Positions 34,117-59,487 of a stretch of DNA of 64,000 bases are shown here, in pieces. The stretch is from positions 1,550,001-1,614,000 of the forward strand of contig NW_027361754.1 in NCBI RefSeq assembly GCF_039654945.1, read 5' to 3'. The notes under the pieces were generated by a model. The model saw nothing but the letters and a program-made list of their open reading frames with translations, made no database searches and was not told where the DNA came from. The stretch's first letter is position 1, and the number at the start of each line of letters is the position of its first letter. The position numbers and the translations under genes are program-made. This stretch comes from Dendrobates tinctorius (Eukaryota).

Positions 34117-38557
<4,441 letters not shown>

Positions 38558-38560
<3 letters not shown>

Positions 38561-38588
38561 GGCGGCGGCTGCGAGAGAAAGAGAGAGA
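38558..38588 (-). promoter_or_regulatory. RPL27A: RPL27A exon 1: 5'TOP/TCT tract, Kozak and ATG, then splice donor
   Basis: The - strand reads TCTCTCTCTTTCTCTCGCAGCCGCCGCC-ATG|gtaagt. Confidence 0.9.
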
Positions 38589-38745
38589 TCCCGGCAGCTC
38601 CCGCGAGAAGTAAGAGGGGGCGGGGACTGAGGGGGTAGGACGTCGTGTTACGGCGAGATCTCGCGAGACTTGAACGGTCACAGGTAACGTGACAGAAGCA
38701 TCGGCGGCGCCGAACACTAGAGGAGGCGGAGGCGGCCATATTGGG
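38589..38745. promoter_or_regulatory. CpG-rich bidirectional promoter with TCTCGCGAGA (BANP/CGCG element), GC box and YY1-like site; candidate non-coding exon 1 of the THAP gene ending at 38683
   Basis: TCTCGCGAGA at 38659-38668, TCCCGCGAGA at 38599-38608, GGGGCGGGG at ~38617-38625, GGCCATATT at ~38734, and + strand donor CAG|GTAACG at 38683/38684. Confidence 0.7.
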
Positions 38746-38949
38746 GGAGACACAGAGGCAAGTGCGACAACTGCGAGACGGCGCTCGGGACAGCAGCGCG
38801 GCGCTGTCACACGGACACCGAGGGTACACGGCCGTGCGTATGTACTGCTCTACTATGCCCCACCGTATACTGCCCATATACACTGTATACGGGGAGCGCA
38901 GGTACTGGGGAGGGGCTCCGCTGCGTAATGTACTGCAGATAGCCCCTGT

Positions 38950-40770
38950 ATGACGACCTGTGCCCCCCTTATCGCGCTGTATGATACCCTGCACCACCCC
39001 TATTGCACCGTATGACACTGCGCCCCCCTTATCGCACTGACACCCTCTGCGCCCCCTTTATCTCGCTGACACCCTCTGCGCCCCCTTTATCTCACTGACA
39101 CCCTCTGCGCCCCCCTTATCGCGCCGTATGACACCCTATGCGCCTCTTATCGCACTGACACCCTCTGCGCGCCCCTTAATGCGCTTACACTCTCTGGGCC
39201 CCTCTTATGCCGTATGACACTGCGCCCCCCTTATCGCACTGACACCCTCTGTACCCCCCTTATCGCACTGACACCCTCTGTACCCCCCTTATCGCACTGA
39301 CACCCTCTGTACCTCCCTTATCCCGCTGACACGCTCTGCGCCCCCCTTATAGCGACGTATAACACCCTCTGCGCCCCCCCTTATCGCGCTGACACCCTCT
39401 GGGCCCCTCTTGTCGTGCCGTATGACACCCTCTGCGCCCCCCTTATCGCGCCGTATAACACCCTCTGCGCCCCCCCTTATCGAGCTTACACTCTCTGTGC
39501 CCCTCTTATCGGGCCGTATGACACTGTGCCCCCCTTATCGCACTGACACCCTCTGCGCCCCCTTATCACTCCGTATGACACCCTCTGCGCCCCCCTTATC
39601 GCACTGACACCCTCTGCACGCCCCTTAACGCGCTTACACTCTCTGGGCCCCTCTTATGCCGTATGACACTGCACACCCCCTTATCACGCTGACACCCTCT
39701 GCGCCCCCCCTTATCGCCCTGACACCCTCTGCGCCCCCCCTTATCGCCCTGACACCCTCTGCGCCCCCCCTTATCGCCCTGACACCCTCTGCGCCCCCCC
39801 TTATCGCCCTGACACCCTCTGCGCCCCCCCTTATCGCGCTGACACCCTCTGGGCCCCTCTTGTCGTGCCGTATGACACCCTCTGCGCCCCCCTTATCGCG
39901 CTTACACTCTCTGGGCCCCTCTTATCGTGCCGTATGACACTGCGCCCCCCTTATCGCACTGACACCCTCTGCGCCCCCTTATCACTCCATATGACACCCT
40001 CTGCGCCCCCCTTATCGCACTGACACCCTCTGCACGCCCCTTAACGCGCTTACACTCTCTGGGCCCCTCTTATGCCATATGACACTGCACCCCCCCCTTA
40101 TCGCGCTGACACCCTCTGCACCCCCCCTTATTGCCCTGACACCCTCTGCGCCCCCCCTTATCGCACTGACACCCGTCTGCGCCCCCCCTTATCGCGCTGA
40201 CACCCTCTGGGCCCCTCTTGTCGTGCCGTATGACACCCTCTGCGCCCCCCTTATCGCGCTTACACTCTCTGGGCCCCTCTTATCGTGCCGTATGACACTG
40301 CGCCCCACTTGTCGCACTGACACCCTCTGCGCCCCCTTATCACTCCGTATGACACCCTCTGCGCGCCCCCTTATCGCACTGACACCCTCTGCGCGCCCCC
40401 TTATCGCACTGACACCCTCTGCGCCCCCCCTTATCGCACTGACTCCCTCTGCGCCCCCCCTTATCGCGCTGACACCCTCTGGTCCCCCCTTATCGCGCTG
40501 ACACCCTCTGGTCCCCCCTTATCGCGCTGACACCCTCTGGGCCCCCCTTATCGCGCTGACACCCTCTGGGCCCCCCTTATCGCGCTGACACCCTCTGGGC
40601 CCCTCTTGTCGCGCCGTATGACACCCTCTGCGCCCCCCCCTTATCTCGCTGACACCCTCTGCGCCCCCTTAGCGCACTGTATGACACCCTCTGCGCCCCC
40701 TTAGCGTGCCGTATGACACCCTCTGTGCCCCCCCCTATCGTGCTGACACTCTTTGCACCCCCCCCCCCCA
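38950..40770. repeat. ~30-bp GC-skewed minisatellite (TGACACCCTCTGCGCCCCCCTTATCGCRC)n in the presumed first intron of the THAP gene
   Basis: Dozens of degenerate tandem units with higher-order duplication; C-rich + strand. Confidence 0.92.
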
Positions 40771-40826
40771 GCTGCTGAGGCTGTGATGCTTTTCGCAGAT
40801 TGACATGTGTTTTCTTTAGAAGCGAG

Positions 40827-43800
40827 ATGACAGTGTGCGCCATGTTCGGGTGCAAGAATCGCAGGCACAAGGGATGCGGCAAGCACTTCTTCAGGTAATC
40901 CAGGTTGGGGGTTTCTCTCATTTTGTGGAACAGAACATGGAGCGCAGCATTCCTGTAGTATTAAGTCCCACAGCTCTGGGACTGCATTCCTCCTCATTCT
41001 CAGGATCTCTGCTCTTATTGCTAACAGCCTGTTCTGCTCACAGCTGCGGGTTTGCTCCTGCGTGTATCTTTTGTATCTGTCCCTGTGATCAGATCCCTTT
41101 GCCGTGGATCGCACTTTGCCATTTTAGTTGTACACTTTGTCTTGTGATTGTCCATGAAGCCCTGGACTGTCTGGGGCCATCGAATGCAGCGAGCGCTCTG
41201 TGACATTTGGGCCCCCCCAGCTCCATTCTCCATAATATCATGGATTGCTGGGCATTGTGGTTTTGCAGCAGCTATAAAGCTGTGGTTCAGGACGACTGCT
41301 AGGAGGAAGTTGGGGGTCTATGAGTGTTTCAATCCACTGACCACAAGCAGAGATAATGCAATTGGTAGAAACAACCATTTGTTGAGTAATAAATCTGTGA
41401 CTTCTTATCTGCAGGTTTCCCATGAAAGATCCGGAACGTCTCATAAAGTGGATTGAAGCCACCCAGAGAGATAACTGGAAACCGTCCATTCACAGCAAGG
41501 TCTGCAGCGACCACTTCACGGAAAAAGACTACATGATCCGTCCGGGGGCGGCCTTTCCTTACCTGCGCATTGACGCAGTGCCCACTCCCCTCCATCCTGA
41601 CCAACGGAAGAAGAAGACTAAAAAGAGGAATTATACTAAGAAAGTAGCAAGCGAAACTGCCGAACCCATGGAAATAAAGACTGAGGATGTGGAACAGGAG
41701 ATCTCCAGCGAGTATGGCTGCAGCTACAGAAAGGAGATTGGAACACAGACAGCTGCGCAAGTGGAGAAAACACAGAAGGTGGTGGAAGCGAGGGTGATAA
41801 AGAGTGAGGATGAATCGCAGGACGAGGAGCAAGTGGTGGTAGAAATGCAGGGCGAGGAGCATGGGGTGGTGGAAACGCAGGGTGAGGAGCATGGGGTGGT
41901 GGAAACGCAGGGTGAGGAGCATGGGGTGGTGGAAACGCAGGGTGAGGAGCATGGGGTAGTGGAAATGCAGGGCGAGGAGTATGGGGTAGTGGAAATGCAG
42001 GGCGAGGAGTATGGGGTAGTGGAAATGCAGGGCGAGGAGCACGGGGAGTTGGAAATGCAGGGTGAGGAGCACGGGGAGTTGGAAATGCAGGGCGAGGAGC
42101 ACAGGGCAATGGAAATGCAGGGCGAGGAGCACGGGGCAATGGAAATGCAGGGCGAGGAGCACGGGGCAATGGAAATGCATGGCGAGGAGCACGGGGCAAT
42201 GGAAATGCAGGGCGAGGAGCACGGGGCAATGGAAATGCAGGGCGAGGAGCACGGGGCAATGGAAATGCAGGGCGAGGAGCACGGGGCAATGGAAATGCAG
42301 GGCGAGGAGCACGGGGCAATGGAAATGCAGGGCGAGGAGCACGGGGCAATGGAAATGCAGGGCGAGGAGCACAGGGCAATGGAAATGCAGGGCGAGGAGC
42401 ACGGGGCAATGGAAATGCAGGGCGAGGAGCACGGGGCAGTGAAAGCGCAGGGCGAGGAGCACGGGGCGGCAGAAGTGCAGGGCGAGGAGCACGGGGCGGC
42501 AGAAGTGCAGGGTAAGGAGCACGGGGCGGCAGAAGTGCAGGGTAAGGAGCACGGGGCGGCAGAAGTGCAGGGTAAGGAGCACGGGGCGGCAGAAGTGCAG
42601 GGTAAGGAGCACGGGGCGGCAGAAGTGCAGGGTAAGGAGCACGGGGCGGCAGAAGTGCAGGGTAAGGAGCACGGGGCGGCAGAAGTGCAGGGTAAGGAGC
42701 ACGGGGCGGCAGAAGTGCAGGGTAAGGAGCACGGGGCGGCAGAAGTGCAGGGTAAGGAGCACGGGGCGGCAGAAGTGCAGGGTAAGGAGCACGGGGCGGC
42801 AGAAGTGCAGGGTAAGGAGCACGGGGCGGCAGAAGTGCAGGGTAAGGAGCACGGGGCGGCAGAAGTGCAGGGTAAGGAGCACGGGGCAGCGGAAAGAAAG
42901 GAGTGGCCTGTGGAAGCACAGGGCGTGGAGCACAGGGCTGCTGAAGTACAGGGTGAGGAGCAAAGGGCGGCAGAAGCACAGGAAAAGGAGCAAGAGGTGG
43001 CAGAAATGCAGGGTGAGAAGCATAGTGTGGCGGAAGCACAGGGTGAGGAGCACGGGGCAGTGGAAGTGCAGGGTGAGGAGCACAGGGCGGCTGAAGCCCA
43101 GGATGAGGAGCACGGGGCGGCGGAAGCACAGCAAGTGGAAGTGCAAGATGATAAGCAGTTGGTGGATTCGCAGCATGGGAAACAGATGGTAAAAGCACAG
43201 GGTAAGCAGCCAGTGGAGTCTCAGGCCATGGAGGTGCAGGGTGAGGAGGAAACAGAAGGTGACATGCATATGGGCAAAGCTCAGAGAAAGCAGAATATGG
43301 ATGTGCATACACAGGGCAAGAAGAAGGTGACAGAAGAGCAGGAAGGGAAGCGTGCAGGGGAAACACAAAATAAAAGGCATAAGGAGGAAATACAGGACAA
43401 GGAGCAGGCGCTGGTATCACCAGAGGAGGTGAGTGTGGAGGGTACAGAGTGTGAGATGCTGGATGTAATAGGGCAGGGAGAGAAAATGAACGTGGGATGG
43501 CAGGCTGAGGGTCCAGCAGTGGGAGAGCAGGCTGAGGGTCCGGCATTGGGAGGGCAGGCTGAGGATCCGGCTGTAGAATCTCGGGATGCAAATATGGAGT
43601 CACCATCTCTAAATGATCAACTGGATGTGGCAGAGCGGCCAACGGAGTGCAAGTGGGCGACAACTAAACAGCCCGCTCGTAAGCCAACAGTGAATGGACA
43701 GGGCAGGAACCGGAGGGCAGGTGCACTGACGGGGAGTTGTCTACCTGACCTGACCATTGTAGTGAACCAGACTGTCAGGAACTTTCCATCCAGACCTCCC

Positions 43801-44751
43801 TGTGAGAATGCAGCTGATTACATTCCCGTTGACCACTCATACTACACTGCATTTGGCGACAAGGAAAACGAGGTTCCTGCCCCCGTCACTGACCCAAAAG
43901 TTGTGAAATTGAGAAAAAAGATCAAAACATTACAAAAGCAAGTCCTGCGCCAGGGCGTCAAGATCAAGAGCCTGAAAAAGTCGCTAGTTAATTTACAGAA
44001 AAACAACATGATGGAGATAGATCCGGAGCAAGTGGTCGCTGAGCACTGCAGCGGCCTCACTCAGGTTCTGTTCACACAACAGCTGAAGAACGGCTGCCGG
44101 CGGCACAGTGTCACCCAGTACTGCAGCCTCATGAAGGAGTTCGCTTTAAACCTGTACTGCGCATCCCCAAAGGCTTACAAATTCTGCAGACTTTTTCTGT
44201 GCCTTCCGCACCCCGTATCTTTGAGAAACTGGAAAGCAGCCATTGAGGGAAACATGGGACCCTCATCTGATGGTTCTGCCCCTGATAATCCTACATTGGG
44301 GGCATTATTTGTAGGGAATGAACATTTACAGGATAGTCCTATTCAAGAAGTAGCTTTGCAGGGACAATCAATTGAAGAGAGACATTTGCCAGAGACCCCC
44401 ATAGAGATGGCACATTTGCCAGTGATGCCAATGCAAGAAGGACATTTTTCTATCATTCCAGGTCTGGAAGGACACTTGTCTGTGGTTCCAGTGCCGGAGG
44501 GACACTTGTCTGTGGTTCCAGTGCCGGAGGGACACTTGTCTGTGGTTCCAGTGCCGGAGGGACACTTGTCTGTGGTTCCAGTGCCGGAGGGACACTTGTC
44601 TGTGGTTCCAGTGCCGGAGGGACACTTGTCTGTGGTTCCAGTGCCGGAGGGACACTTGTCTGTGGTTCCAGTGCAAAATGGAGATTTCTCTGTGATTCCA
44701 GTGCACAAGGGACATTTGCAGCAATCATCTGTGCAGGAGGAACTGCAGTAA
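40827..44751 (+). CDS. THAP-domain protein (~1134 aa; exons 40827-40894 and 41415-44751), THAP9/P-element-transposase-derived, lacking the catalytic domain
   Basis: Spliced N-terminus MTVCAMFGCKNRRHKGCGKHFFR|FPMKDPERLIKWIEATQRDNWKPSIHSKVCSDHF...LRIDAVPT (C2CH, conserved P/W/F, AVPT box). GT-AG phase-2 intron. DHSY motif, coiled coil, and YCSLMKEFALNLYCASPKAYKFCRLFLCLPHPVSLRNW. Uninterrupted 3.3-kb frame. Confidence 0.9.
41842..42890 (+). repeat. Coding 30-bp tandem repeat (~35 units; QGEEHGVVET > QGEEHGAMEM > QGKEHGAAEV)
   Basis: Exact 30-nt periodicity that preserves the frame. Variants are arranged in homogeneous blocks. Confidence 0.95.
44467..44672 (+). repeat. Coding 30-bp tandem repeat (EGHLSVVPVP) x ~7
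   Basis: GTGCCGGAGGGACACTTGTCTGTGGTTCCA repeated identically. Confidence 0.95.
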
Positions 44752-47392: not shown

Positions 47393-49035
47393 TAGTCATA
47401 TGTTAAAGTTTGGGCACCCCTATTAATGTTAACCTTTTTTCTTTATAACAATTTTGTTTTTTGCAACATTTCAGTTTCATATATCTAATAACTGATGGAG
47501 TCAGTTATATTTCTGGATTCAAATGAGGTTTATTGTACTAACAGAAAATGTGCAATCTGCATTTAAACAAAATTTGACCGGTGCAAAAGTATGGGCACCC
47601 TTATCATTTTCTTGATTTGAACACTCCTAACTACTTTTTGCTGACTTCCTGAACCACTAAATTGGTTTTGTAACCTCATTGAGCTTTGAACTTCATAGCC
47701 AGGTGTATCAAATCATGAGAAAAGGTATTTAAGGTGGCCACTTGCAAGTAGTTCTCCTATTTGATTCTCCTATGAAGAGTGGCATCATGGGCTCCTCAAA
47801 ACAACTCTCAAATGATCTGAAAACAAAGATTATTCAACATAGCTTTTCAGGGGAAGGATACAAAAAGTTGTCTCAGAGATTTAACCTGTCAGTTTCCACT
47901 GTGAGGAACATAGTAAGGAAATGGAAGAACACAGGTACAGTTCTTGTTAAGTCCAGAAGTGGCAGGCCAAGAAAAATATCAGAAAGGCAGAGAAGAAGAA
48001 TGGTGAGAGCAGTCAAGGACAATCCACAGACCACCTCCAAAGACCTGCAGCATCATCTTGCTGCAGATGGTGTCACTGTGCATCGGTCAACAATACAGCG
48101 CACTTTGCACAAGGAGAAGCTGTATGGGAGAGTGATGTGAAAGAAGCCGTTTCTGCAAGCACGCCACAAACAGAGTCGCCTGAGGTATGCAAAAGCACAT
48201 TTGGACAAGCCAGTTACATTTTGGAAGAAGGTCCTGTGGACTGATGAAACAAAGATTGAGTTGTTTGGTCATACAAAAAGGCGTTATGCATGGAGGCTAA
48301 AAAACACAGCATTCCAAGAAAAACACTTGCTACCCACAGAAAAATTTGGTGGAGGTTCCATCATGCTTTGGGGCTGTGTGGCCAATGCCGGCACCGGGAA
48401 TCTTGTTAAAGTTGAGGGTCGCATGGATTCAACTCAGTATCAGCAGATTCTTGAAAATAATGTGCAAGAAAAAGTGAAGAAGTTGAAGTTACGCAGGGGA
48501 TGGATATTTCAGGAAGACAATGATCCAAAACACCGCTCCAAATCTACTCAGGCATTCATGCAGAGGAACAACTACAATGTTCTGGAATGGCCATCCCAGT
48601 CCCAAGACCTGAATATCATTGAACATCTGTGGGATGATTTGAAGCGGGCTGTCCATGCTCGGCGACCATCAAACTTAACTGAACTGGAATTGTTTTGTAA
48701 ACAGGAATGGTCACAAATACCTTCATCCAGGATCCAGGAACTCATTAATAGCTACAGGAAGCGACTAGAGGCTGTTATTTTTGCAAAAGGAGGATCTACG
48801 AAATATTAATGTCACTTTTATGTTGAGGTGCCCATACTTTTGCACCGGTCAAATTATGTTTAAATGCAGATTGCACATTTTCTGTTAGTACAATAAACCT
48901 CATTTGAATCCAGAAATCACTGAGTCCATCAATTATTAGATATATGAAACTGAAATAGCTGTTGCAAAAACCAAAATTGTTATAAAGAAAAAAGGTTAAC
49001 ATTAATAGGGGTGCCCAAACTTTAACATATGACTG
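47393..49035 (+). mobile_element. Full-length Tc1 transposon with long (~210 bp) IR/DR-type TIRs
   Basis: AGTCATATGTTAAAGTTTGGGCACCCCT at both ends in inverted orientation, inner repeat AAAAGTATGGGCACC, and right-hand TA. Confidence 0.92.
47787..48809 (+). pseudogene. Tc1 DD34E transposase (340 codons) with one in-frame nonsense codon at 48138-48140
   Basis: ORFs 47742-48140 and 48201-48809 are in the same frame. GRPRK, WTDETK and FQEDNDPKH...34 aa...E. Confidence 0.92.
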
Positions 49036-49802: not shown

Positions 49803-51424
49803 CAGTGCCTTGTGAAAGTATTCGGCTCCCTGGAACTTTTCAACCTTTTCCCACATATCATGCTTCAAACATAAAGATACCAAATGTAAATTTTTGGTGA
49901 AGAATCAACAACAAGTGGGAGACAATTGTGAAGTTGAACAAAATTTATTGGTTATTTTAAATTTTTGTGGAAATTCAAAAACTGAAAAGTGGGACGTGCA
50001 ATATTATTCAACCCCTTTATCTTAATGCTTTGTTGCGCCACCTTTTGCTGCGATTACAGCTGCAAGTCGCTTGGGGTATGTCTCTATCAGTTTTGTACAT
50101 CGAGAGACTGAAATTCTTGCCCATTCTTCCTTGGCAAACAGCTCGACCTCAGTGAGGTTTGATGGAGATCGTTTGTGAACAGCAGTTTTCAGCTCTTTCC
50201 ACAGATTCTCGATTGGATTCAGGTCTGGACTTTGACTTGGCCATTCTAACACCTGGATACGTTTATTTGTGAACCATTCCATTGTAGATTTTGCTTTATG
50301 TTTGGGACCATTGTCTTGTTGGAAGACAAATTCCGTCCCAGTCTCAGGTCTTTTGCAGACACCAACATGTTTTCTTCAAGAATGGTCCTGTATTTGGCTC
50401 CATCCATCTTCCCATCAATTTTAACCATCTTCCCTGTTCCTGCTGAAGAAAAGCAGACCCAAACCATGATGCTGCCACCACCATGTTTGACAGTGGGGAT
50501 GGTGTGTTCAGGGTGATGAGCTGTGTTGCCTTTACGCCAAACATATCGTTTGGCATTGTTGACAAAAAGTTAGATTTTGGTTTCATCTGACCAGAGCACC
50601 TTCTTCCACATGTTTGGTGAGTCTCCCAGGTGGCTTGTTGCAAACTTTAAACGACACTTTTATGGATATCTTAGAGAAATGGCTTTCTTCTTGCCACTCT
50701 TCAATAAAGGCCAGATTTGTGCAGTGTATGACTGATTGTTGTCCTATGGACAGACTGTCCCACCTCAGCTGTAGATCTCTGCAGTTCATCCAGAGTGATC
50801 ATGGGCCTCTTGGCTGCATCTCTGATCAGTCTTCTCCTTGTTTGAGATGAAAGTTTAGAGGGACGGCCGGGTCTTGGTAGATTTGCAGTGGTATGATACT
50901 CCTTCCATTTCAATATGATCGCTTGCACAGTGCTCCTTGGGATGTTTAAAGTTTTGGAAATCATTTTGTATCCAAATCCGGCTTTAAATCTCTCCACAAC
51001 AGTATCACGGACCTTGTTGTATTCCTTGATCTTCGTGATGCTCTCTGTGCTTCAAACAGAACCCTGAGACTATCACAGAGCAGGTGCATTTATACGGAGA
51101 CTTGATTACACACAGGTGGATTATATTTATCATCATTAGTCATTTAGGACAACATTGGATCATTCCGAGATCCACAATGAACTTCTGGAGTGAGTTTGCT
51201 GTACTGAAAGTAAAGAGGCTGAATAATATTGCACGCCCCACTTTTCAGTTTTTGAATTTCCACAAAAGTTTAAAATCAATACATTTCATTCAACTTCACA
51301 ATTCTGTCCCACTTGTAGGTGATTCTCCACCAAAAATTTACATTTGGTATCTTTATGTTTGAAGCATGATATGTGGGAAAAGGTTGAAAAGTTCCAGGGG
51401 GCCGAATACTTTCACAACGCACTG
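49803..51424 (-). mobile_element. Tc1 transposon with frameshifted transposase (~50022-51040)
   Basis: TIR CAGTGCCTTGTGAAAGTATTCGG with TA flanks. Fragments PGRPSKLS, MVWVCFSSAGTG and WPSQSPDLNPIENLW lie in different frames. Confidence 0.92.
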
Positions 51425-51842: not shown

Positions 51843-53764
51843 CATATAAATCCAAAACAAAGAGATAAATAATACAAAAAGACCTTATATTAAAGTGTAC
51901 ATAAACCTACCACAGGAAGGACAAATAATAGCAATAGTGGTAAAGAAAACGTGACTTGGGGCCCCGTCACACATAGCGACTCACCAGCGATCCCGATAAC
52001 GATATGACCTTGTCAGGATCGCTGGTGTTGCTACATGATCGCTGGTGAGCTGTCAAACAGGCAGCTTCACCAGCGATCAGGACAGCAACATGCGGGTAAC
52101 AATCGACGCACGTCGCTTAGTTACCCGCAGTGTACGTTAAGATACCAGCGCGCTGGTAACTAAGGTAAACATCGGCTTTCTAAGCGCCGCGTGGCGCTTA
52201 GGAACCCGCTGTTTACCTTGTTTAGCAGCTCGCTGATCGCTGGTCTCCCGCCTGCCACACGCAGCTGAGATGAGATGGTTTAGTGACTCCTGCATTGAGC
52301 AGGGGGTTGGACACGATGACCATGTAGTTTCCTTCCAACTCTAACATTCTATAACGAGTTTCCTTCCAACTCTAACATTCTATAACGACATTTTTCTGAC
52401 AGTGATCTGGTAGGAGTCAGTCTAATTTATCTCGCTCCCTTTTAGGATTTCCTCCGCATCTCAAATCTTTACAAAAGTAGTGACTGCAGTCATTGCAGGA
52501 CTGAGAGGTAGAAGCATCGTCAGATGCCTGGATACTTGATGTTTACATTTGTGGGCATTTCGTCCTGAATTGGTCATCCCCCAAAGATTCTGGGAAAGTT
52601 CCACTGGAACTGTGAAAGGTATTTGACCAGAGTCTTCTAAGTCCATAGATTTGAGATGATAGGGAGTCACCCAATTTTGAAGGCCCCAAGAGATCAGTCT
52701 CCTGGTCCTCCGACCAGATTGATGAAGGATCTCAGGGATTTATTCATGTCGTTCAATTCCAAAGAAGACTGGACCTCGGGAGCTGGTTCTTTACTGTAAG
52801 AGCAGTGAATCTGTGGAATAGTCACCTCGGCAGCTGGTTCTTTACTGTAAGAGCAATGAATCTGTGGAATAGTCACCTCGGGAGCTGGTTCTTTACTGTA
52901 AGAGCAGTGAATCTGTGGAATAGTCACCTCAGGAGCTGGTTCTTTACTGTAAGAGCAGTGAATCTGTGGAATAGTCACCTCGGCAGCTGGTTCTTTAATG
53001 TAAGCGCGGTGAATCTGTGGAAGTCACCTCGGCAGCTGGTTCTTTACTGTAAGAGCAGTGAATCTGTGGAATAGTCACCTCGGGAGCTGGTTCTTTACTA
53101 TAAGAGCGGTAAATCTGTGGAATAGTCACCTCGGCAGCTGGTTCTTTACTGTAAGAGCAATGAATCTGTGGAATAGTCACCTCGGGAGCTGGTTCTTTAC
53201 TGTAAGAGCAGTGAATCTGTGGAATAGTCACCTCAGGAGCTGGTTCTTTACTGTAAGAGCAGTGAATCTGTGGAATAGTCACCTCAGGAGCTGGTTCTTT
53301 ACTGTAAGAGCAGTGAATCTGTGGAATAGTCACCTCGGCAGCTGGTTCTTTAATGTAAGCGCGGTGAATCTGTGGAAGTCACCTCGGCAGCTGGTTCTTT
53401 ACTGTAAGAGCAGTGAATCTGTGGAATAGTCACCTCGGGAGCTGGTTCTTTACTATAAGAGCGGTAAATCTGTGGAATAGTCACCTCGGCAGCTGGTTCT
53501 TTACTGTAAGAGCAGTGAATCTGTGGAATAGTCACCTCGGCAGCTAGTTCTTTACTATAAGAGCGGTGAATCTGTGGAATAGTCACCTTGGGAGTTGGTT
53601 CTTTACTATAAGAGCGGTGAATCTGTGGAATAGTTACCTCAGGAGCTAGTTCTTTACTATAAGAGCAGTGAATCTGTGGAATAGTCACCTCGGGAGCTGG
53701 TTCTTTACTATAAGAGCAGTGAATCTGTGGAATAGTCACCTCGGGAGCTGGTTCTTTACTGTAA

Positions 53765-54438
53765 GGCTGTGTGCACACGCTGCGGATTTAGGTGCGGATT
53801 GATCCGCTCGGATTTTGTAAAATCCGCAGGTCAAAATACCTGCGGTTTTACCTGCGGATTGCTCTGTGGTTTTGCCCTGCGGTTTTTCATCTCAATGGAG
53901 GAGATGGCAAACCGCAGCAGAATCTGCAGAAAGAATTGACATGTCAATTCTTTCTGCGGATTGAAAACCGCAGATAACCCGCGCGGAAAATTCTGCACCG
54001 TCTGCACTGCGGTTTTTGATTCCCATAGGGAATCATGGTACTGTACACCGCAGCAGGAACCGCAGCAAAATCCGCAGCGTGTGCACACACCCTAAGGCTA
54101 TGTGCACACGCTGCGTATTCTGCTGCGAATCTGCAGCAGTTCTGCAGACAGTGTACAGTACCATGTAAGTCTATGGGATTTACAATCCGCAGTGCACATG
54201 CTGCGGATTTTCACTGCGGAAAAGCTGCGGTTTTAAATCCGCAGAAAGAATTAACATGTCAATTCTTTCTGTGGATTCCGCTGCGGTTTGCCATCTATTC
54301 CATTGTCCAGGTGTCAAACCGCAGGGGAAAACCGCTGGCCAATCCGCAGGTAAAACCGCAGGTCATTTTAACTGCGGTTTTACCTGCGGATCCGCAGATA
54401 CAAATCCGTGGATGAATTCGCAGCGTGTGCACATAGCC
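53765..54438. mobile_element. Two adjacent Harbinger-type MITEs (53765-54092, 54096-54438) sharing a TAA
   Basis: TIRs GGCTRTGTGCACACGCTGCG with TAA/TAA/TTA flanks. Confidence 0.85.
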
Positions 54439-54859: not shown

Positions 54860-55516
54860 TAAGAGCGGTGAATCTGTGGAATAGTCACTAGAGTTGAGCG
54901 AATTTGATCGGGTCCCTGCTTATTGGCAAGTTATAGCACTTACCTATAAGCTGCAAAGGGAACCAGGATACGTGGAGCATACCGGCTGATCAGCTGTCCG
55001 GTGCCGCAGTTGCATGGAGAGCCTGTGTATTGGGAATTTGGTGAATGATGAGAAGCTGCTTCTATCTGTACATGGAGAATTACGTGCATTGTGGTCTTAT
55101 AGGAGGTGAGGGCCCACCGGGGAATTTACCTCCGCTGTGTGCCGGTCCGAGCCCGATCAGCTTTATACACTGCAGGCTGGAGACGTGACTGATCACATGG
55201 TCATGACATCATCAAAGGTCCTTTAGCCCAGATAGCCTGACTCCTCCCATAACGGATCACATGGTCATGACAGGTCCTTCAGCATTGGGATCTGCGCTCT
55301 AGTGAGGTGGTTGAGCTGCGGGACATCAGCACAGAGTGGCCGCCCTGCTGCAACACCTCCGGCCCATCCCGGTGAGTGCAGACTGCCTCTCGTCCGCCCC
55401 AGACTCCGAATGTGTGGGAGCGTCTGCTGCTCCGGAGTCTGGGGGCGCGGGGTCACCGAGAGCGACCAGGCCGGTACACAGCACAAACGGTGGCGTCTGC
55501 TGAGATCAACAATCCG

Positions 55517-58500
55517 CTCACACACATCCCACACTGAGATGCACACTGCTGAGACACATCCCACACTGAGATACATCCCACACTGAGATACATCCCACAC
55601 TGAGATACACACACACACACACACACACACACGCTGCCGAAATACATCCCACACTGAGATACACACACACGCTGCCGAGATACATCCCACACTGAGATAC
55701 ATCCCACACTGAGATGCACACTGCTGAGACACATCCCACACTGAGATGCACACTGCTGAGACACATCCCACACTGAGATGCACACTGCTGAGATACATCC
55801 CACACTGAGATACATCCCACACTGAGATGCACACTGCTGAGACACATCCCACACTGAGATGCACACTGCTGAGATACATCCCACACTGAGATACATCCCA
55901 CACTGAGATACATCCCACACTGAGATACATCCCACACTGAGACACATCCCACACTGAGATGCACACTGCTGAGACACATCCCACACTGAGATGCACACTG
56001 CTGAGATACATCCCACACTGAGATACATCCCACACTGAGATACATCCCACACTGAGACACATCCCACACTGAGATGCACACTGCTGAGACACATCCCACA
56101 CTGAGATGCACACTGCTGAGATACATCCCACGCTGAGATACATCCCACACTGAGATGCACACTGCTGAGATACATCCCACACTGAGATGCACACTGCTGA
56201 GACACATCCCACACTGAGATGCACACTGCTGAGACACATCCCACACTGAGATGCACACTGCTGAGACACATCCCACACTGAGATGCACACTGCTGAGACA
56301 CATCCCACACTGAGATACATCCCACACTGAGATGCACACTGCTGAGACACATCCCACACTGAGATGCACACTGCTGAGACACATCCCACACTGAGATGCA
56401 CACTGCTGAGATACATCCCACACTGAGATACATCCCACACTGAGATGCACACTGCTGAGACACATCCCACACTGAGATGCACACTGCTGAGACACATCCC
56501 ACACTGAGATGCACACTGCTGAGATACATCCCACACTGAGATACATCCCACACTGAGATACATCCCACACTGAGACACATCCCACACTGAGATGCACACT
56601 GCTGAGACACATCCCACACTGAGATGCACACTGCTGAGATACATCCCACACTGAGATACATCCCACACTGAGATACATCCCACACTGAGACACATCCCAC
56701 ACTGAGATGCACACTGCTGAGACACATCCCACACTGAGATGCACACTGCTGAGATACATCCCACGCTGAGATACATCCCACACTGAGATGCACACTGCTG
56801 AGATACATCCCACACTGAGATGCACACTGCTGAGACACATCCCACACTGAGATGCACACTGCTGAGACACATCCCACACTGAGATGCACACTGCTGAGAC
56901 ACATCCCACACTGAGATGCACACTGCTGAGACACATCCCACACTGAGATGCACACTGCTGAGACACATCCCACACTGAGATGCACACTGCTGAGACACAT
57001 CCCACACTGAGATGCACACTGCTGAGATACATCCCACACTGAGATGCACACTGCTGAGACACATCCCACACTGAGATGCACACTGCTGAGACACATCCCA
57101 CACTGAGATGCACACTGCTGAGACACATCCCACACTGAGATGCACACTGCTGAGACACATCCCACACTGAGATGCACACTGCTGAGACACCTCCCACACT
57201 GAGATGCACACTGCTGAGACACCTCCCACACTGAGATGCACACTGCTGAGACACCTCCCACACTGAGATGCACACTGCTGAGACACCTCCCACACTGAGA
57301 TGCACACTGCTGAGACACCTCCCACACTGAGATGCACACTGCTGAGACACCTCCCACACTGAGATGCACACTGCTGAGACACATCCCACACTGAGATGCA
57401 CACTGCTGAGACACATCCCACACTGAGATGCACACTGCTGAGACACATCCCACACTGAGATGCACACTGCTGAGACACATCCCACACTGAGATGCACACT
57501 GCTGAGACACATCCCACACTGAGATGCACACTGCTGAGACACATCCCACACTGAGATGCACACTGCTGAGACACATCCCACACTGAGATGCACACTGCCG
57601 AGACACATCCCACACTGAGATGCACACTGCCGAGACACATCCCACACTGAGATGCACACTGCCGAGACACATCCCACACTGAGATGCACACTGCCGAGAC
57701 ACATCCCACACTGAGATGCACACTGCCGAGACACATCCCACACTGAGATGCACACTGCCGAGACACATCCCACACTGAGATGCACACTGCCGAGACACAT
57801 CCCACACTGAGATGCACACTGCCGAGACACATCCCACACTGAGATGCACACTGCCGAGACACATCCCACACTGAGATGCACACTGCCGAGACACATCCCA
57901 CACTGAGATGCACACTGCCGAGACACATCCCACACTGAGATGCACACTGCCGAGACACATCCCACACTGAGATGCACACTGCCGAGACACATCCCACACT
58001 GAGATGCACACTGCCGAGACACATCCCACACTGAGATGCACACTGCCGAGACACATCCCACACTGAGATGCACACTGCCGAGACACATCCCACACTGAGA
58101 TGCACACTGCCGAGACACATCCCACACTGAGATGCACACTGCCGAGACACATCCCACACTGAGATGCACACTGCCGAGACACATCCCACACTGAGATACA
58201 CACACACTGCCGAGATACATCCCACACTGAGATACACACTGCCGAGATACATCCCACTCTGAGATACACACTGCCGAGATACATCCCACACTGAGATGCA
58301 CACTGCCGAGATACATCCCACACTGAGATGCACACTGCCGAGACACATCCCACACTGAGATGCACACTGCCGAGACACATCCCACACTGAGATGCACACT
58401 GCTGAGACACATCCCACACTGAGATGCACACTGCTGAGACACATCCCACACTGAGATGCACACTGCTGAGACACATCCCACACTGAGATGCACACTGCTG

Positions 58501-59087
58501 AGACACATCCCACACTGAGATGCACACTGCTGAGATACATCCCACACTGAGATGCACACTGCTGAGACACATCCCACAGAGATGCACACTGCTGAGACAC
58601 ATCCCACACTGAGATGCACACTGCTGAGACACATCCCACACTGAGATACACACACACACACGCTGCCGAGATACATCCCACACTGAGATACACACTGCCG
58701 AGATACATCCCACACTGAGATGCACACTGCCGAGATACATCCCACACTGAGATGCACACTGCTGAGACACATCCCACACTGAGATGCACACTGCTGAGAC
58801 ACATCCCACACTGAGATGCACACTGCTGAGACACATCCCACACTGAGATGCACACTGCTGAGACACATCCCACACTGAGATACACACTGCTGAGACACAT
58901 CCCACACTGAGATACACACACACACGCTGCCGAGATACATCCCACACTGAGATACACACACACACGCTGCCGAGATACATCCCACACTGAGATACACACT
59001 GCTGAGACACATCCCACACTGAGATACACACTGCTGAGACACATCACACACTGAGATACACACTGCCGAGACACATCACACACTGAG

Positions 59088-59124
<37 letters not shown>

Positions 59125-59487
59125 CGAGACACATCACACACTGAGATACACACACATGCTGCCGAGATACATCCCACACTGAGATGCACACTGCTGAGAC
59201 ACATCACACACTGAGATACACACTGCCGAGACACATCACACACTGAGATACACACACTGCCGAGATACATCACACACTGAGATGCACACTGCCGAGACAC
59301 ATCACACACTGAGATGCACACTGCCGAGACACATCACACACTGAGATACACACACACACTGCCGAGATACATCCCACACTGAGATACACACACACACGCT
59401 GCCGAGATACATCCCACACTGAGATGCACACTGCTGAGACACATCACACACTGAGATACACACTGCCGAGACACATCACACACTGAG

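What the first reader, a model, noticed from the sequence alone, without database searches (positions are those of the whole stretch)
38558..38745. The THAP gene appears to share a ~100-bp bidirectional promoter with RPL27A
Seen: the RPL27A TOP start (~38588, - strand) lies under 100 bp from a + strand donor CAG|GTAACG (38683). A perfect palindromic TCTCGCGAGA, a second TCCCGCGAGA and a GC box lie between them. A good acceptor (tttctttag, 40819) precedes the THAP ATG. Knowledge: TCTCGCGAGA is the BANP-bound CGCG element of CpG-island promoters, including ribosomal protein genes, and can support divergent transcription. Inference: a transposase-derived gene captured the divergent output of a strong housekeeping promoter, which is a plausible route to domestication and co-regulation.
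Basis: partly seen in the sequence, partly recalled or inferred. Interest (0 to 1): 0.7.

Follow-up and report, generated by a model that had tools for sequence, protein, structure and literature searches.

The report
THAP gene shares RPL27A's divergent promoter

Summary
RPL27A is a real, intron-containing gene on the - strand. Its exon 1 is a TOP/TCT tract plus the ATG at 38560..38558, and its introns hold two SNORA3/45 snoRNAs.

It covers at least 38731/38748/38751 and ends at donors 38823 or 38837 (38833 in the related species). No contig uses the proposed donor at 38683. That GT lies in a decayed E-box and is absent in Phyllobates.

The THAP transcript therefore begins at most ~145-150 bp from the inferred RPL27A start. 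An independent NCBI model in Rhinoderma reaches the equivalent of 38689, about 100 bp away.

The ~210-bp unit is conserved in seven neobatrachian frogs while the flanking introns are not. It holds RPL27A exon 1, two or three CGCG elements, and a 23-nt YY1-like block at the start of THAP exon 1.

Verdict: the bidirectional CpG-island promoter is supported and the exon model is corrected. Functional sharing and "promoter capture" remain inferred. The kind is known: about 30% of human RP genes have a divergent partner. An earlier scan note covers the THAP gene itself.

The parts
38558..38588 (-). RPL27A exon 1. It holds the pyrimidine TOP/TCT tract (38573-38588), with the inferred start at C 38581-38587, a 5'UTR of about 21-27 nt, and the ATG at 38560..38558. 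The donor GT is at 38557-38556.
   Evidence: Read directly. The downstream exons translate to RPL27A. The end of the Rhinoderma RPL27A coding range, L002:9879, maps to window 38560. The tract is conserved in seven frogs. The start site itself is inferred, not measured.
38599..38608 (.). CGCG element 1, the variant TCCCGCGAGA, 12-18 nt upstream of the inferred RPL27A start.
   Evidence: It is present at the aligned place in all seven species, as TCCCGCGAGA or TCTCGCGAGA (TCTCGCGCGA in Mantella).
38616..38625 (.). GC box GGGGGCGGGG, Sp1-type by consensus.
   Evidence: The core CGGGG is conserved in the four hyloid species only.
38659..38668 (.). CGCG element 2, the perfect palindrome TCTCGCGAGA.
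   Evidence: It is conserved with its GA flank in the hyloids (Ranitomeya has 1 mismatch). Mixophyes and Staurois carry three elements and Mantella two.
38685..38693 (.). Decayed E-box TAACGTGAC. The relatives have TCACGTGAC or TCACATGAC.
   Evidence: Alignment A1. Phyllobates has GATCAC, so no GT. No RNA contig uses this donor.
38731..38753 (+). Conserved 23-nt block GGCGGCCATATTGGGGGAGACAC, with a YY1-like core GCCATATT, at the 5' end of THAP exon 1.
   Evidence: It occurs once per locus, always on the THAP-sense strand, about 167-208 bp from the RPL27A ATG in seven species. It lies inside the RNA contig of run X5 and inside exon 1 of the Rhinoderma model. YY1 binding is inferred from the consensus only.
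38731..38837 (+). THAP gene exon 1, non-coding, minimal extent. The true start is probably 38670-38731. Alternative donors follow 38823 (GAGG|GTACAC) and 38837 (GTGC|GTATGT); the related species uses 38833.
   Evidence: tables 5 and 8. Contig records 1, 11 and 18 carry this exon joined to the coding exons (exon 2 and the start of exon 3 for records 1 and 18). All joints are GT..AG. There is no ATG in 38669-38837.
38838..40819 (+). THAP intron 1. It holds a C-rich 29-bp tandem array at 39018-40763 (58 copies).
   Evidence: array; joints.
40820..40894 (+). THAP exon 2. The acceptor is tttctttag|aag, the ATG is at 40827, and the exon encodes the first zinc-ligand half of the THAP domain. The donor is CAG|GTAAT.
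   Evidence: One search shows joints into 40819/40820 in all four runs and the joint 40894>41415. One search shows the sequence. The coding part is conserved in nine sequences.
41415..44751 (+). THAP exon 3. It encodes the rest of the THAP domain, 10-residue repeats and the P-element transposase HTH domain. The stop is at 44749-44751.
   Evidence: ORF; Pfam PF05485 and PF12017; contigs from 41412/41415 onward.
35615..36752 (-). Two SNORA3/SNORA45 H/ACA snoRNAs in RPL27A introns (36622-36752 and 35615-35745). They mark this as the ancestral host-gene copy of RPL27A.
   Evidence: Rfam RF00334, 96.7 and 91.4 bits against a gathering score of 51.

Best explanation
RPL27A (- strand) and the THAP/P-transposase-derived gene (+ strand) are a divergent pair driven from one TATA-less CpG-island promoter of about 210 bp (38545-38755).

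RPL27A starts in its TCT/TOP tract at about 38581-38587. This is inferred.

The THAP gene starts about 100-150 bp away, most likely at 38690-38730. That is 20-70 nt beyond the distal CGCG element and just upstream of, or at, a deeply conserved YY1-like 23-nt block. The start position is inferred; RNA contigs show transcription from 38731 at the latest.

Its non-coding exon 1 ends at alternative donors 38823/38837 and is spliced over a 2-kb repeat-filled intron to 40820, 7 nt before the ATG. This is shown.

Two palindromic CGCG elements, with a GC box between them, lie between the two starts; the E-box remnant follows the distal element, at or just upstream of the inferred THAP start. By analogy with published reporter work, the CGCG elements are the likeliest drivers of initiation in both directions. 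This is inferred.
For: 1. RNA contigs. Single contigs in four runs (three studies, two related species) carry 38731/38751/38794 to 38823/38833/38837, then exon 2, then exon 3. All joints are GT..AG on the + strand. No contig runs collinear into 40820 from upstream.

2. Independent gene model. The first 34 residues of the NCBI Rhinoderma protein P0004 map exactly to L002:10001-10104. That is 122 bp from the RPL27A ATG and equals window 38689-~38790. A GTACGT donor follows, and the acceptor lies 20 kb downstream.

3. Synteny. RPL27A lies head-to-head upstream of the orthologue in Phyllobates, Ranitomeya, Rhinoderma, Mixophyes, Mantella and Staurois.

4. Conservation. Between the window and Rhinoderma, only the promoter (38535-38755) and the two coding exons align within 38300-41500. 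The CGCG elements and the 23-nt block keep their order and strand in seven species.

5. Internal ATG exon. In the eight frog genomes aligned, a 3' splice site lies 7-30 nt before the ATG, so the ATG exon is always internal.

6. Literature. The CGCG element drives bidirectional transcription, with starts 20-70 nt away on either strand (PMC6192621). About 30% of human RP genes have a divergent partner within 500 bp (PMC10813206). Downstream YY1 sites are typical of RP promoters (PMC554972).
Against: - No 5'-end data exist here. Contigs cannot show a start, so both start sites are inferred.
- No run covered 38534-38730.
- Sharing of cis-elements is an analogy and was not tested in frogs.
- In Gastrophryne and Hyperolius, RPL27A is not within 10 kb of the ATG exon, so the arrangement is unconfirmed there.
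- A ranid-like transcript contig (L008) has a 5' part that does not contain the conserved block.
- The 5' end of the Rhinoderma model could be partly ab initio.
Confidence: 0.75

Rival explanations
1. The two core promoters are adjacent but functionally independent within one CpG island. RPL27A uses its TCT initiator plus the proximal CGCG element and GC box. The THAP gene uses its own E-box and YY1-like elements. Closeness reflects shared open chromatin only.
For: The 23-nt block and the E-box lie on the THAP side. The GC box is conserved only in hyloids, and the number and spacing of CGCG elements vary between lineages. PMC10813206 found no bias of the motif toward bidirectional RP genes.
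Against: The whole interval is only ~100-150 bp, and the distal CGCG element sits 52-82 nt from the block in the six species where the gap was measured. That is within or near the published 20-70-nt window for initiation on either side. By the usual operational definition (divergent starts under 1 kb apart) it is a bidirectional promoter either way.
Confidence: 0.18
2. The RPL27A-proximal exon is a minor alternative 5' exon, in effect a spliced promoter-upstream transcript. The main THAP promoter lies elsewhere, in intron 1 or far upstream.
For: Contigs show presence, not abundance. The L008 transcript contig from another frog has an unrelated 5' part.
Against: All four runs assembled the exon 1-exon 2 junction, and none assembled an alternative 5' end into 40820. 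Exon 1 of the Rhinoderma model is at the same place. The start of exon 1 is as conserved as the coding exons. The 5' part of L008 ends in a pyrimidine tract plus AG at the conserved acceptor, so it looks like a retained intron.
Confidence: 0.05
3. One reading: a + strand start at ~38630-38670 and a ~50-nt exon ending at the donor CAG|GTAACG (38683), spliced to 40820.
For: The GT and a fair donor consensus are present. The acceptor is right.
Against: No joint from 38683 appears in any of four runs, and all assembled exons lie downstream of it. The GT is missing in Phyllobates, and the site is a mutated E-box.
Confidence: 0.02

Closest known systems
Human ribosomal protein genes with divergent partners and a TCTCGCGAGA motif (RPL12, RPL15, RPL23A; PMC10813206)
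   Same: An RP gene with a TOP/TCT start lies in a TATA-less CpG island with the palindromic CGCG motif. A second gene is transcribed the other way within a few hundred bp.
   Different: Here the partner is a frog-specific gene derived from a transposase. RPL27A is not mentioned in that paper's main text, where the bidirectional examples are named. Relative expression of the two genes was not measured here.
CGCG-element promoters such as human DENR, with three tandem elements (Mahpour et al. 2018, PMC6192621)
   Same: There are two to three copies of TCTCGCGAGA or one-mismatch variants in tandem in a CpG island. Inferred starts on both strands lie a few tens of nt from an element.
   Different: No functional, methylation or factor-binding data exist for the frog element. 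The proximal element lies only 12-18 nt from the inferred RPL27A start, which is closer than the published 20-70 nt.
Human THAP9 / THAP9-AS1 head-to-head pair (PMC9326536)
   Same: A P-element-derived THAP gene sits at a predicted bidirectional promoter.
   Different: The human partner is a lncRNA, and THAP9 keeps the full transposase. The frog gene keeps only the THAP and HTH front end and is paired with an RP gene. The two are not shown to be orthologous.
Promoter acquisition by domesticated genes and retrogenes (PMC3369469, citing Kalitsis and Saffery 2009)
   Same: A gene derived from a mobile element is transcribed from a neighbour's bidirectional CpG-rich promoter through a newly evolved 5' untranslated exon and intron.
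   Different: The order of events (promoter first, gene later) is not shown here, for lack of an outgroup.

Membership tests
Bidirectional promoter (divergent gene pair) | Two genes on opposite strands, transcribed away from each other | tested here: met
   RPL27A exons are on the - strand. THAP joints are GT..AG on the + strand.
Bidirectional promoter (divergent gene pair) | Transcription start sites less than 1 kb apart | tested here: met
   The THAP RNA reaches 38731. The RPL27A ATG is at 38560, so the two transcripts are at most 171 bp apart even if the UTR is ignored. The exact starts were not measured.
Bidirectional promoter (divergent gene pair) | Shared cis-elements needed for both directions | not testable with these tools
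   This needs a dual reporter or genome editing.
CGCG-element CpG-island promoter (Mahpour 2018) | TCTCGCGAGA consensus, often in tandem copies | tested here: met
   One perfect copy and one 1-mismatch copy lie 60 bp apart. They are conserved in seven species.
CGCG-element CpG-island promoter (Mahpour 2018) | TATA-less CpG island context | tested here: met
   GC is 0.62-0.70 and CpG o/e 1.0-1.2 over 38300-38900. There is no TATA-like hexamer in 38500-38900.
CGCG-element CpG-island promoter (Mahpour 2018) | Divergent starts 20-70 nt from the element on either strand | tested here: inconclusive
   Contig ends at 38731-38751 lie 63-83 nt beyond element 2. The Rhinoderma model reaches 16 nt beyond it. 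The inferred RPL27A start is 12-18 nt from element 1. There are no 5'-end data.
CGCG-element CpG-island promoter (Mahpour 2018) | Unmethylated and bound by BANP, ZBTB33 or DYRK1A | not testable with these tools
   No methylation or ChIP data are available.
Vertebrate RP gene promoter (TOP/TCT initiator, downstream YY1) | Start embedded in a pyrimidine tract, short 5'UTR, GCCAT-type box downstream | tested here: met
   The tract at 38573-38588 holds the conserved core CTCTTTC. GCCGCCATGG spans the ATG. The start itself was not measured. See PMC554972.

The most novel reading that the evidence does not exclude
The ~210-bp unit is an ancient, roughly mirror-symmetric bidirectional module, older than 100 million years by published frog timetrees. 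It has a GCCAT box downstream of each start and CGCG elements in the middle. It ties a DNA-binding remnant of a P-element transposase to the growth-regulated expression programme of a ribosomal protein gene. Landing beside it is what allowed the transposase fragment to be domesticated. The 23-nt block would then be a dedicated control element of the THAP direction, not of RPL27A.
Probability: 0.15. Interest if true: 0.5.

Novelty: new member of a known kind. Interest (0 to 1): 0.33.

Why it matters
This locus gives a precisely mapped, deeply conserved natural example of a transposase-derived gene running off the divergent side of a ribosomal protein promoter. A short list of conserved elements (two or three CGCG palindromes and one 23-nt YY1-like block) can be mutated one by one. 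It also corrects the gene model, which matters for annotating this undescribed frog gene. The principle is already established: bidirectional CpG-island promoters, CGCG elements, and promoter capture by domesticated genes are all known. The value is as a clean test case, not a new mechanism.

Tried and rejected
1. Rejected: no joint in four runs, and it is not conserved as GT.

2. The 121-bp gap between gene calls in Rhinoderma, read as a distance between transcription starts. Rejected: the ranges are coding ranges (L002:9879 is the RPL27A ATG). The useful fact is that the model's first coding exon lies there.

3. L008, a Logan transcript contig of a ranid-like frog (SRR2086385), as evidence for exon 1 in ranids. 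Uninformative: only positions 156 onward match Staurois or Mantella. The upstream part ends in a pyrimidine tract plus AG at the conserved acceptor, so it is probably a retained intron.

4. Gastrophryne and Hyperolius. Neither RPL27A nor the block lies within the 10-kb flank. Intron 1 may simply be longer, as it is in Rhinoderma (20 kb).

5. Leptodactylus P0003. No locus is on record.

6. An outgroup RPL27A locus (Xenopus, Spea). It could not be fetched, because RPL27A is spliced and no single exon is long enough for the length-bounded protein search.

7. Disclosure. In one search a script concatenated window exon 1 and exon 2 letters in memory, only to count ATG triplets in the 5'UTR (none found).

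9. CTCF-like and CLEAR/USF readings of ACACTAGAG and TCACGTGAC are resemblances from memory only. They were not tested and are not claimed.

Full report
**Observation**

- On the - strand, RPL27A exon 1 is a pyrimidine tract (38573-38588), a short leader and the ATG at 38560..38558, followed by GTAAGT.
- The downstream exons read as RPL27A. Two of its introns hold SNORA3/SNORA45 snoRNAs at 96.7 and 91.4 bits. This marks the locus as the ancestral, intron-containing host gene.
- Going rightward from the tract come:
  - TCCCGCGAGA at 38599-38608;
  - a GC box at 38616-38625;
  - the perfect palindrome TCTCGCGAGA at 38659-38668;
  - CAG|GTAACG with its exon end at 38683.
- The acceptor tttctttag ends at 40819, 7 nt before the THAP ATG at 40827.
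- The exact 10-mer occurs once in 64 kb. Four matches with up to 1 mismatch are found against 1.07 expected, and two of them lie here.
- The interval is a TATA-less CpG island, with GC 0.62-0.70 and CpG o/e 1.0-1.2.
- The + strand gene carries a THAP domain and a P-element transposase HTH domain.

**Transcripts**

The one read-laying run used contigs from four runs: X1, X17 and X19 of organism A, and X5 of a related organism B (three studies). All four contain spliced contigs, so they are RNA.
- Record 18 (X5) covers 38731-38833, 40820-40891 and 41412 onward.
- Record 11 (X19) covers 38751-38837 and then exon 3, with the 72 letters of exon 2 in between.
- Record 1 (X1) covers 38794-38822, 40819-40891 and 41412 onward.
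- The joints are 38823>40820 (X1), 38837>40820 (X17, X19) and 38833>40820 (X5). Each is GT..AG on the + strand. All four runs also show 40894>41415.

So the acceptor is right and the ATG exon is internal. The upstream exon is linked to the THAP coding exons in single contigs. Nothing uses 38683, and no contig covers 38534-38730. There is no collinear contig into 40820, so a start just upstream of the ATG exon has no support. Contigs cannot show true 5' ends, so 38731 is only the latest possible start.

**Relatives**

The word-based protein search found orthologues with THAP plus Tnp_P_element domains in eight other frogs: Phyllobates, Ranitomeya, Leptodactylus, Rhinoderma, Mixophyes, Staurois, Mantella, Hyperolius and Gastrophryne. 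The window is closest to Ranitomeya, so it comes from a dendrobatid-like frog.

Fetching the loci shows RPL27A head-to-head upstream in Phyllobates, Ranitomeya, Rhinoderma, Mixophyes, Mantella and Staurois. The gene ranges given are coding ranges, because L002:9879 maps to the A of the RPL27A ATG.

The NCBI Rhinoderma model P0004 has 34 extra N-terminal residues. They map exactly to L002:10001-10104, which is 122 bp from the RPL27A ATG and equals window 38689 to about 38790. A GTACGT donor follows, and the acceptor lies 20 kb downstream. That is an independent gene model placing exon 1 in the same CpG island and reaching about 100 bp from the RPL27A start. Its upstream ATG lies in CACATGAC. 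The other species have no ATG there, so the N-terminal extension is probably not real coding sequence.

**Conservation**

Between the window and Rhinoderma, only three pieces of 38300-41500 align: 38535-38755, exon 2 and the start of exon 3. The alignments show the following blocks in order:
- RPL27A exon 1 with the core CTCTTTC;
- CGCG element 1;
- the GC box (hyloids only);
- CGCG element 2;
- an E-box, TCACGTGAC, in the relatives;
- ACACTAGRG;
- a 23-nt block, GGCGGMCATWTTGKGGRRGACAC.

The window has TAACGTGAC at the E-box.

The 23-nt block occurs exactly once per locus, on the THAP-sense strand, about 167-208 bp from the RPL27A ATG in all seven species. Its core, GCCATATT or GACATTTT, fits the YY1 consensus as I know it. 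Downstream YY1 sites are a hallmark of vertebrate RP promoters (PMC554972). RPL27A's own GCCGCCATGG spans its ATG on the other side, which gives the unit a rough mirror symmetry.

In the eight frog genomes aligned, a 3' splice site lies 7-30 nt before the ATG. The dendrobatids use a newer site at 40819/40820. The older site survives as ttttcgcag at 40799. An upstream non-coding exon is therefore a conserved feature.

The seven species span Hyloidea, Myobatrachoidea and Ranoidea, which is crown Neobatrachia. Published timetrees, cited from my own knowledge and not tested here, put that at well over 100 million years.

**Mechanism**

Mahpour et al. (PMC6192621) showed the following about the CGCG element:
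- It is enriched in RP and housekeeping CpG-island promoters.
- It suffices to drive bidirectional transcription in reporters.
- It acts additively in tandem copies.
- It lies 20-70 nt (peak ~50) upstream of starts on either strand.

Applied here, element 2 predicts + strand starts at about 38690-38740. That fits the contig ends, the Rhinoderma model and the position of the block. The gap from the distal element to the block is 52-82 nt in the six species where it was measured.

The inferred RPL27A start is 12-18 nt from element 1 and 72-78 nt from element 2.

The best reading is therefore one compact bidirectional promoter. Its two starts lie about 100-150 bp apart, with the CGCG elements as the likely shared drivers. 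The arrangement is shown; the sharing of elements is inferred.

**Comparison and novelty**

- About 25% of human RP promoters carry the motif. About 30% of RP genes have a divergent partner within 500 bp, including RPL12, RPL15 and RPL23A, which also carry the motif (PMC10813206).
- Human THAP9 itself sits at a predicted bidirectional promoter with THAP9-AS1 (PMC9326536).
- Domesticated genes using neighbours' bidirectional CpG promoters through new 5' untranslated exons is an established idea (PMC3369469).
- No paper in the library pairs RPL27A with such a partner.

This is a new member of a known kind. It is well documented and deeply conserved, but not surprising in principle.

**Limits**

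- Both start sites are inferred.
- Sharing of elements is untested.
- Gastrophryne and Hyperolius are unresolved.
- The 'capture' scenario lacks an outgroup.
One script concatenated two exons in memory only to count ATGs.

Noticed in passing
window 39018-40763: THAP intron 1 holds a C-rich 29-bp tandem array of 58 copies at 77% match. Phyllobates and Ranitomeya have a homologous array at the same place. Contigs of runs X17 and X19 lie on it, many fitting two places. These may be pre-mRNA or other copies of the repeat.
   Followed up: partly
window 41817-42895 and 44466-44718: THAP exon 3 holds in-frame 30-bp coding repeats: 36 copies at 96% and 8.4 copies at 94%. They encode 10-residue acidic and proline/valine-rich repeats. 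The orthologues have different repeat units at the same places, so the repeats turn over quickly while the THAP and HTH ends are kept.
   Followed up: partly
window 36622-36752 and 35615-35745 (- strand): Two SNORA3/SNORA45-family H/ACA snoRNAs lie in RPL27A introns. As I recall, this is the same host-gene relationship as in mammals.
   Followed up: yes
window 40790-40820: Two acceptors lie 20 nt apart. The site ttttcgcag|att (40799/40800) aligns with the acceptor position of all non-dendrobatid frogs. The RNA contigs use the dendrobatid-specific tttctttag|aag (40819/40820).
   Followed up: partly
L002:10001-10104 (Rhinoderma); L001:4971-8629 (Phyllobates); L003 (Ranitomeya): The public gene models look off here. 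The Rhinoderma THAP model starts at an ATG inside the E-box and adds a 43-residue N-terminal extension (34 residues from exon 1) that the other models lack. The Phyllobates RPL27A-side model has 209 residues and runs through the promoter. The Ranitomeya THAP model overlaps RPL27A.
   Followed up: partly
window 47742-48809 (+) and 50022-50997 (-): These ORFs read like Tc1/mariner-type transposase pieces downstream of the THAP gene. They were not scanned against Pfam.
   Followed up: no
window 55265-59191: A roughly 4-kb satellite-like array is open in several frames on the - strand. A further short-period repeat lies at 52694-53778.
   Followed up: no
L004:17065-21958 and L006:14880-23685: In Mixophyes and Gastrophryne a FYRN/FYRC-domain gene follows the THAP gene on the same strand, so the synteny extends beyond RPL27A.
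   Followed up: no
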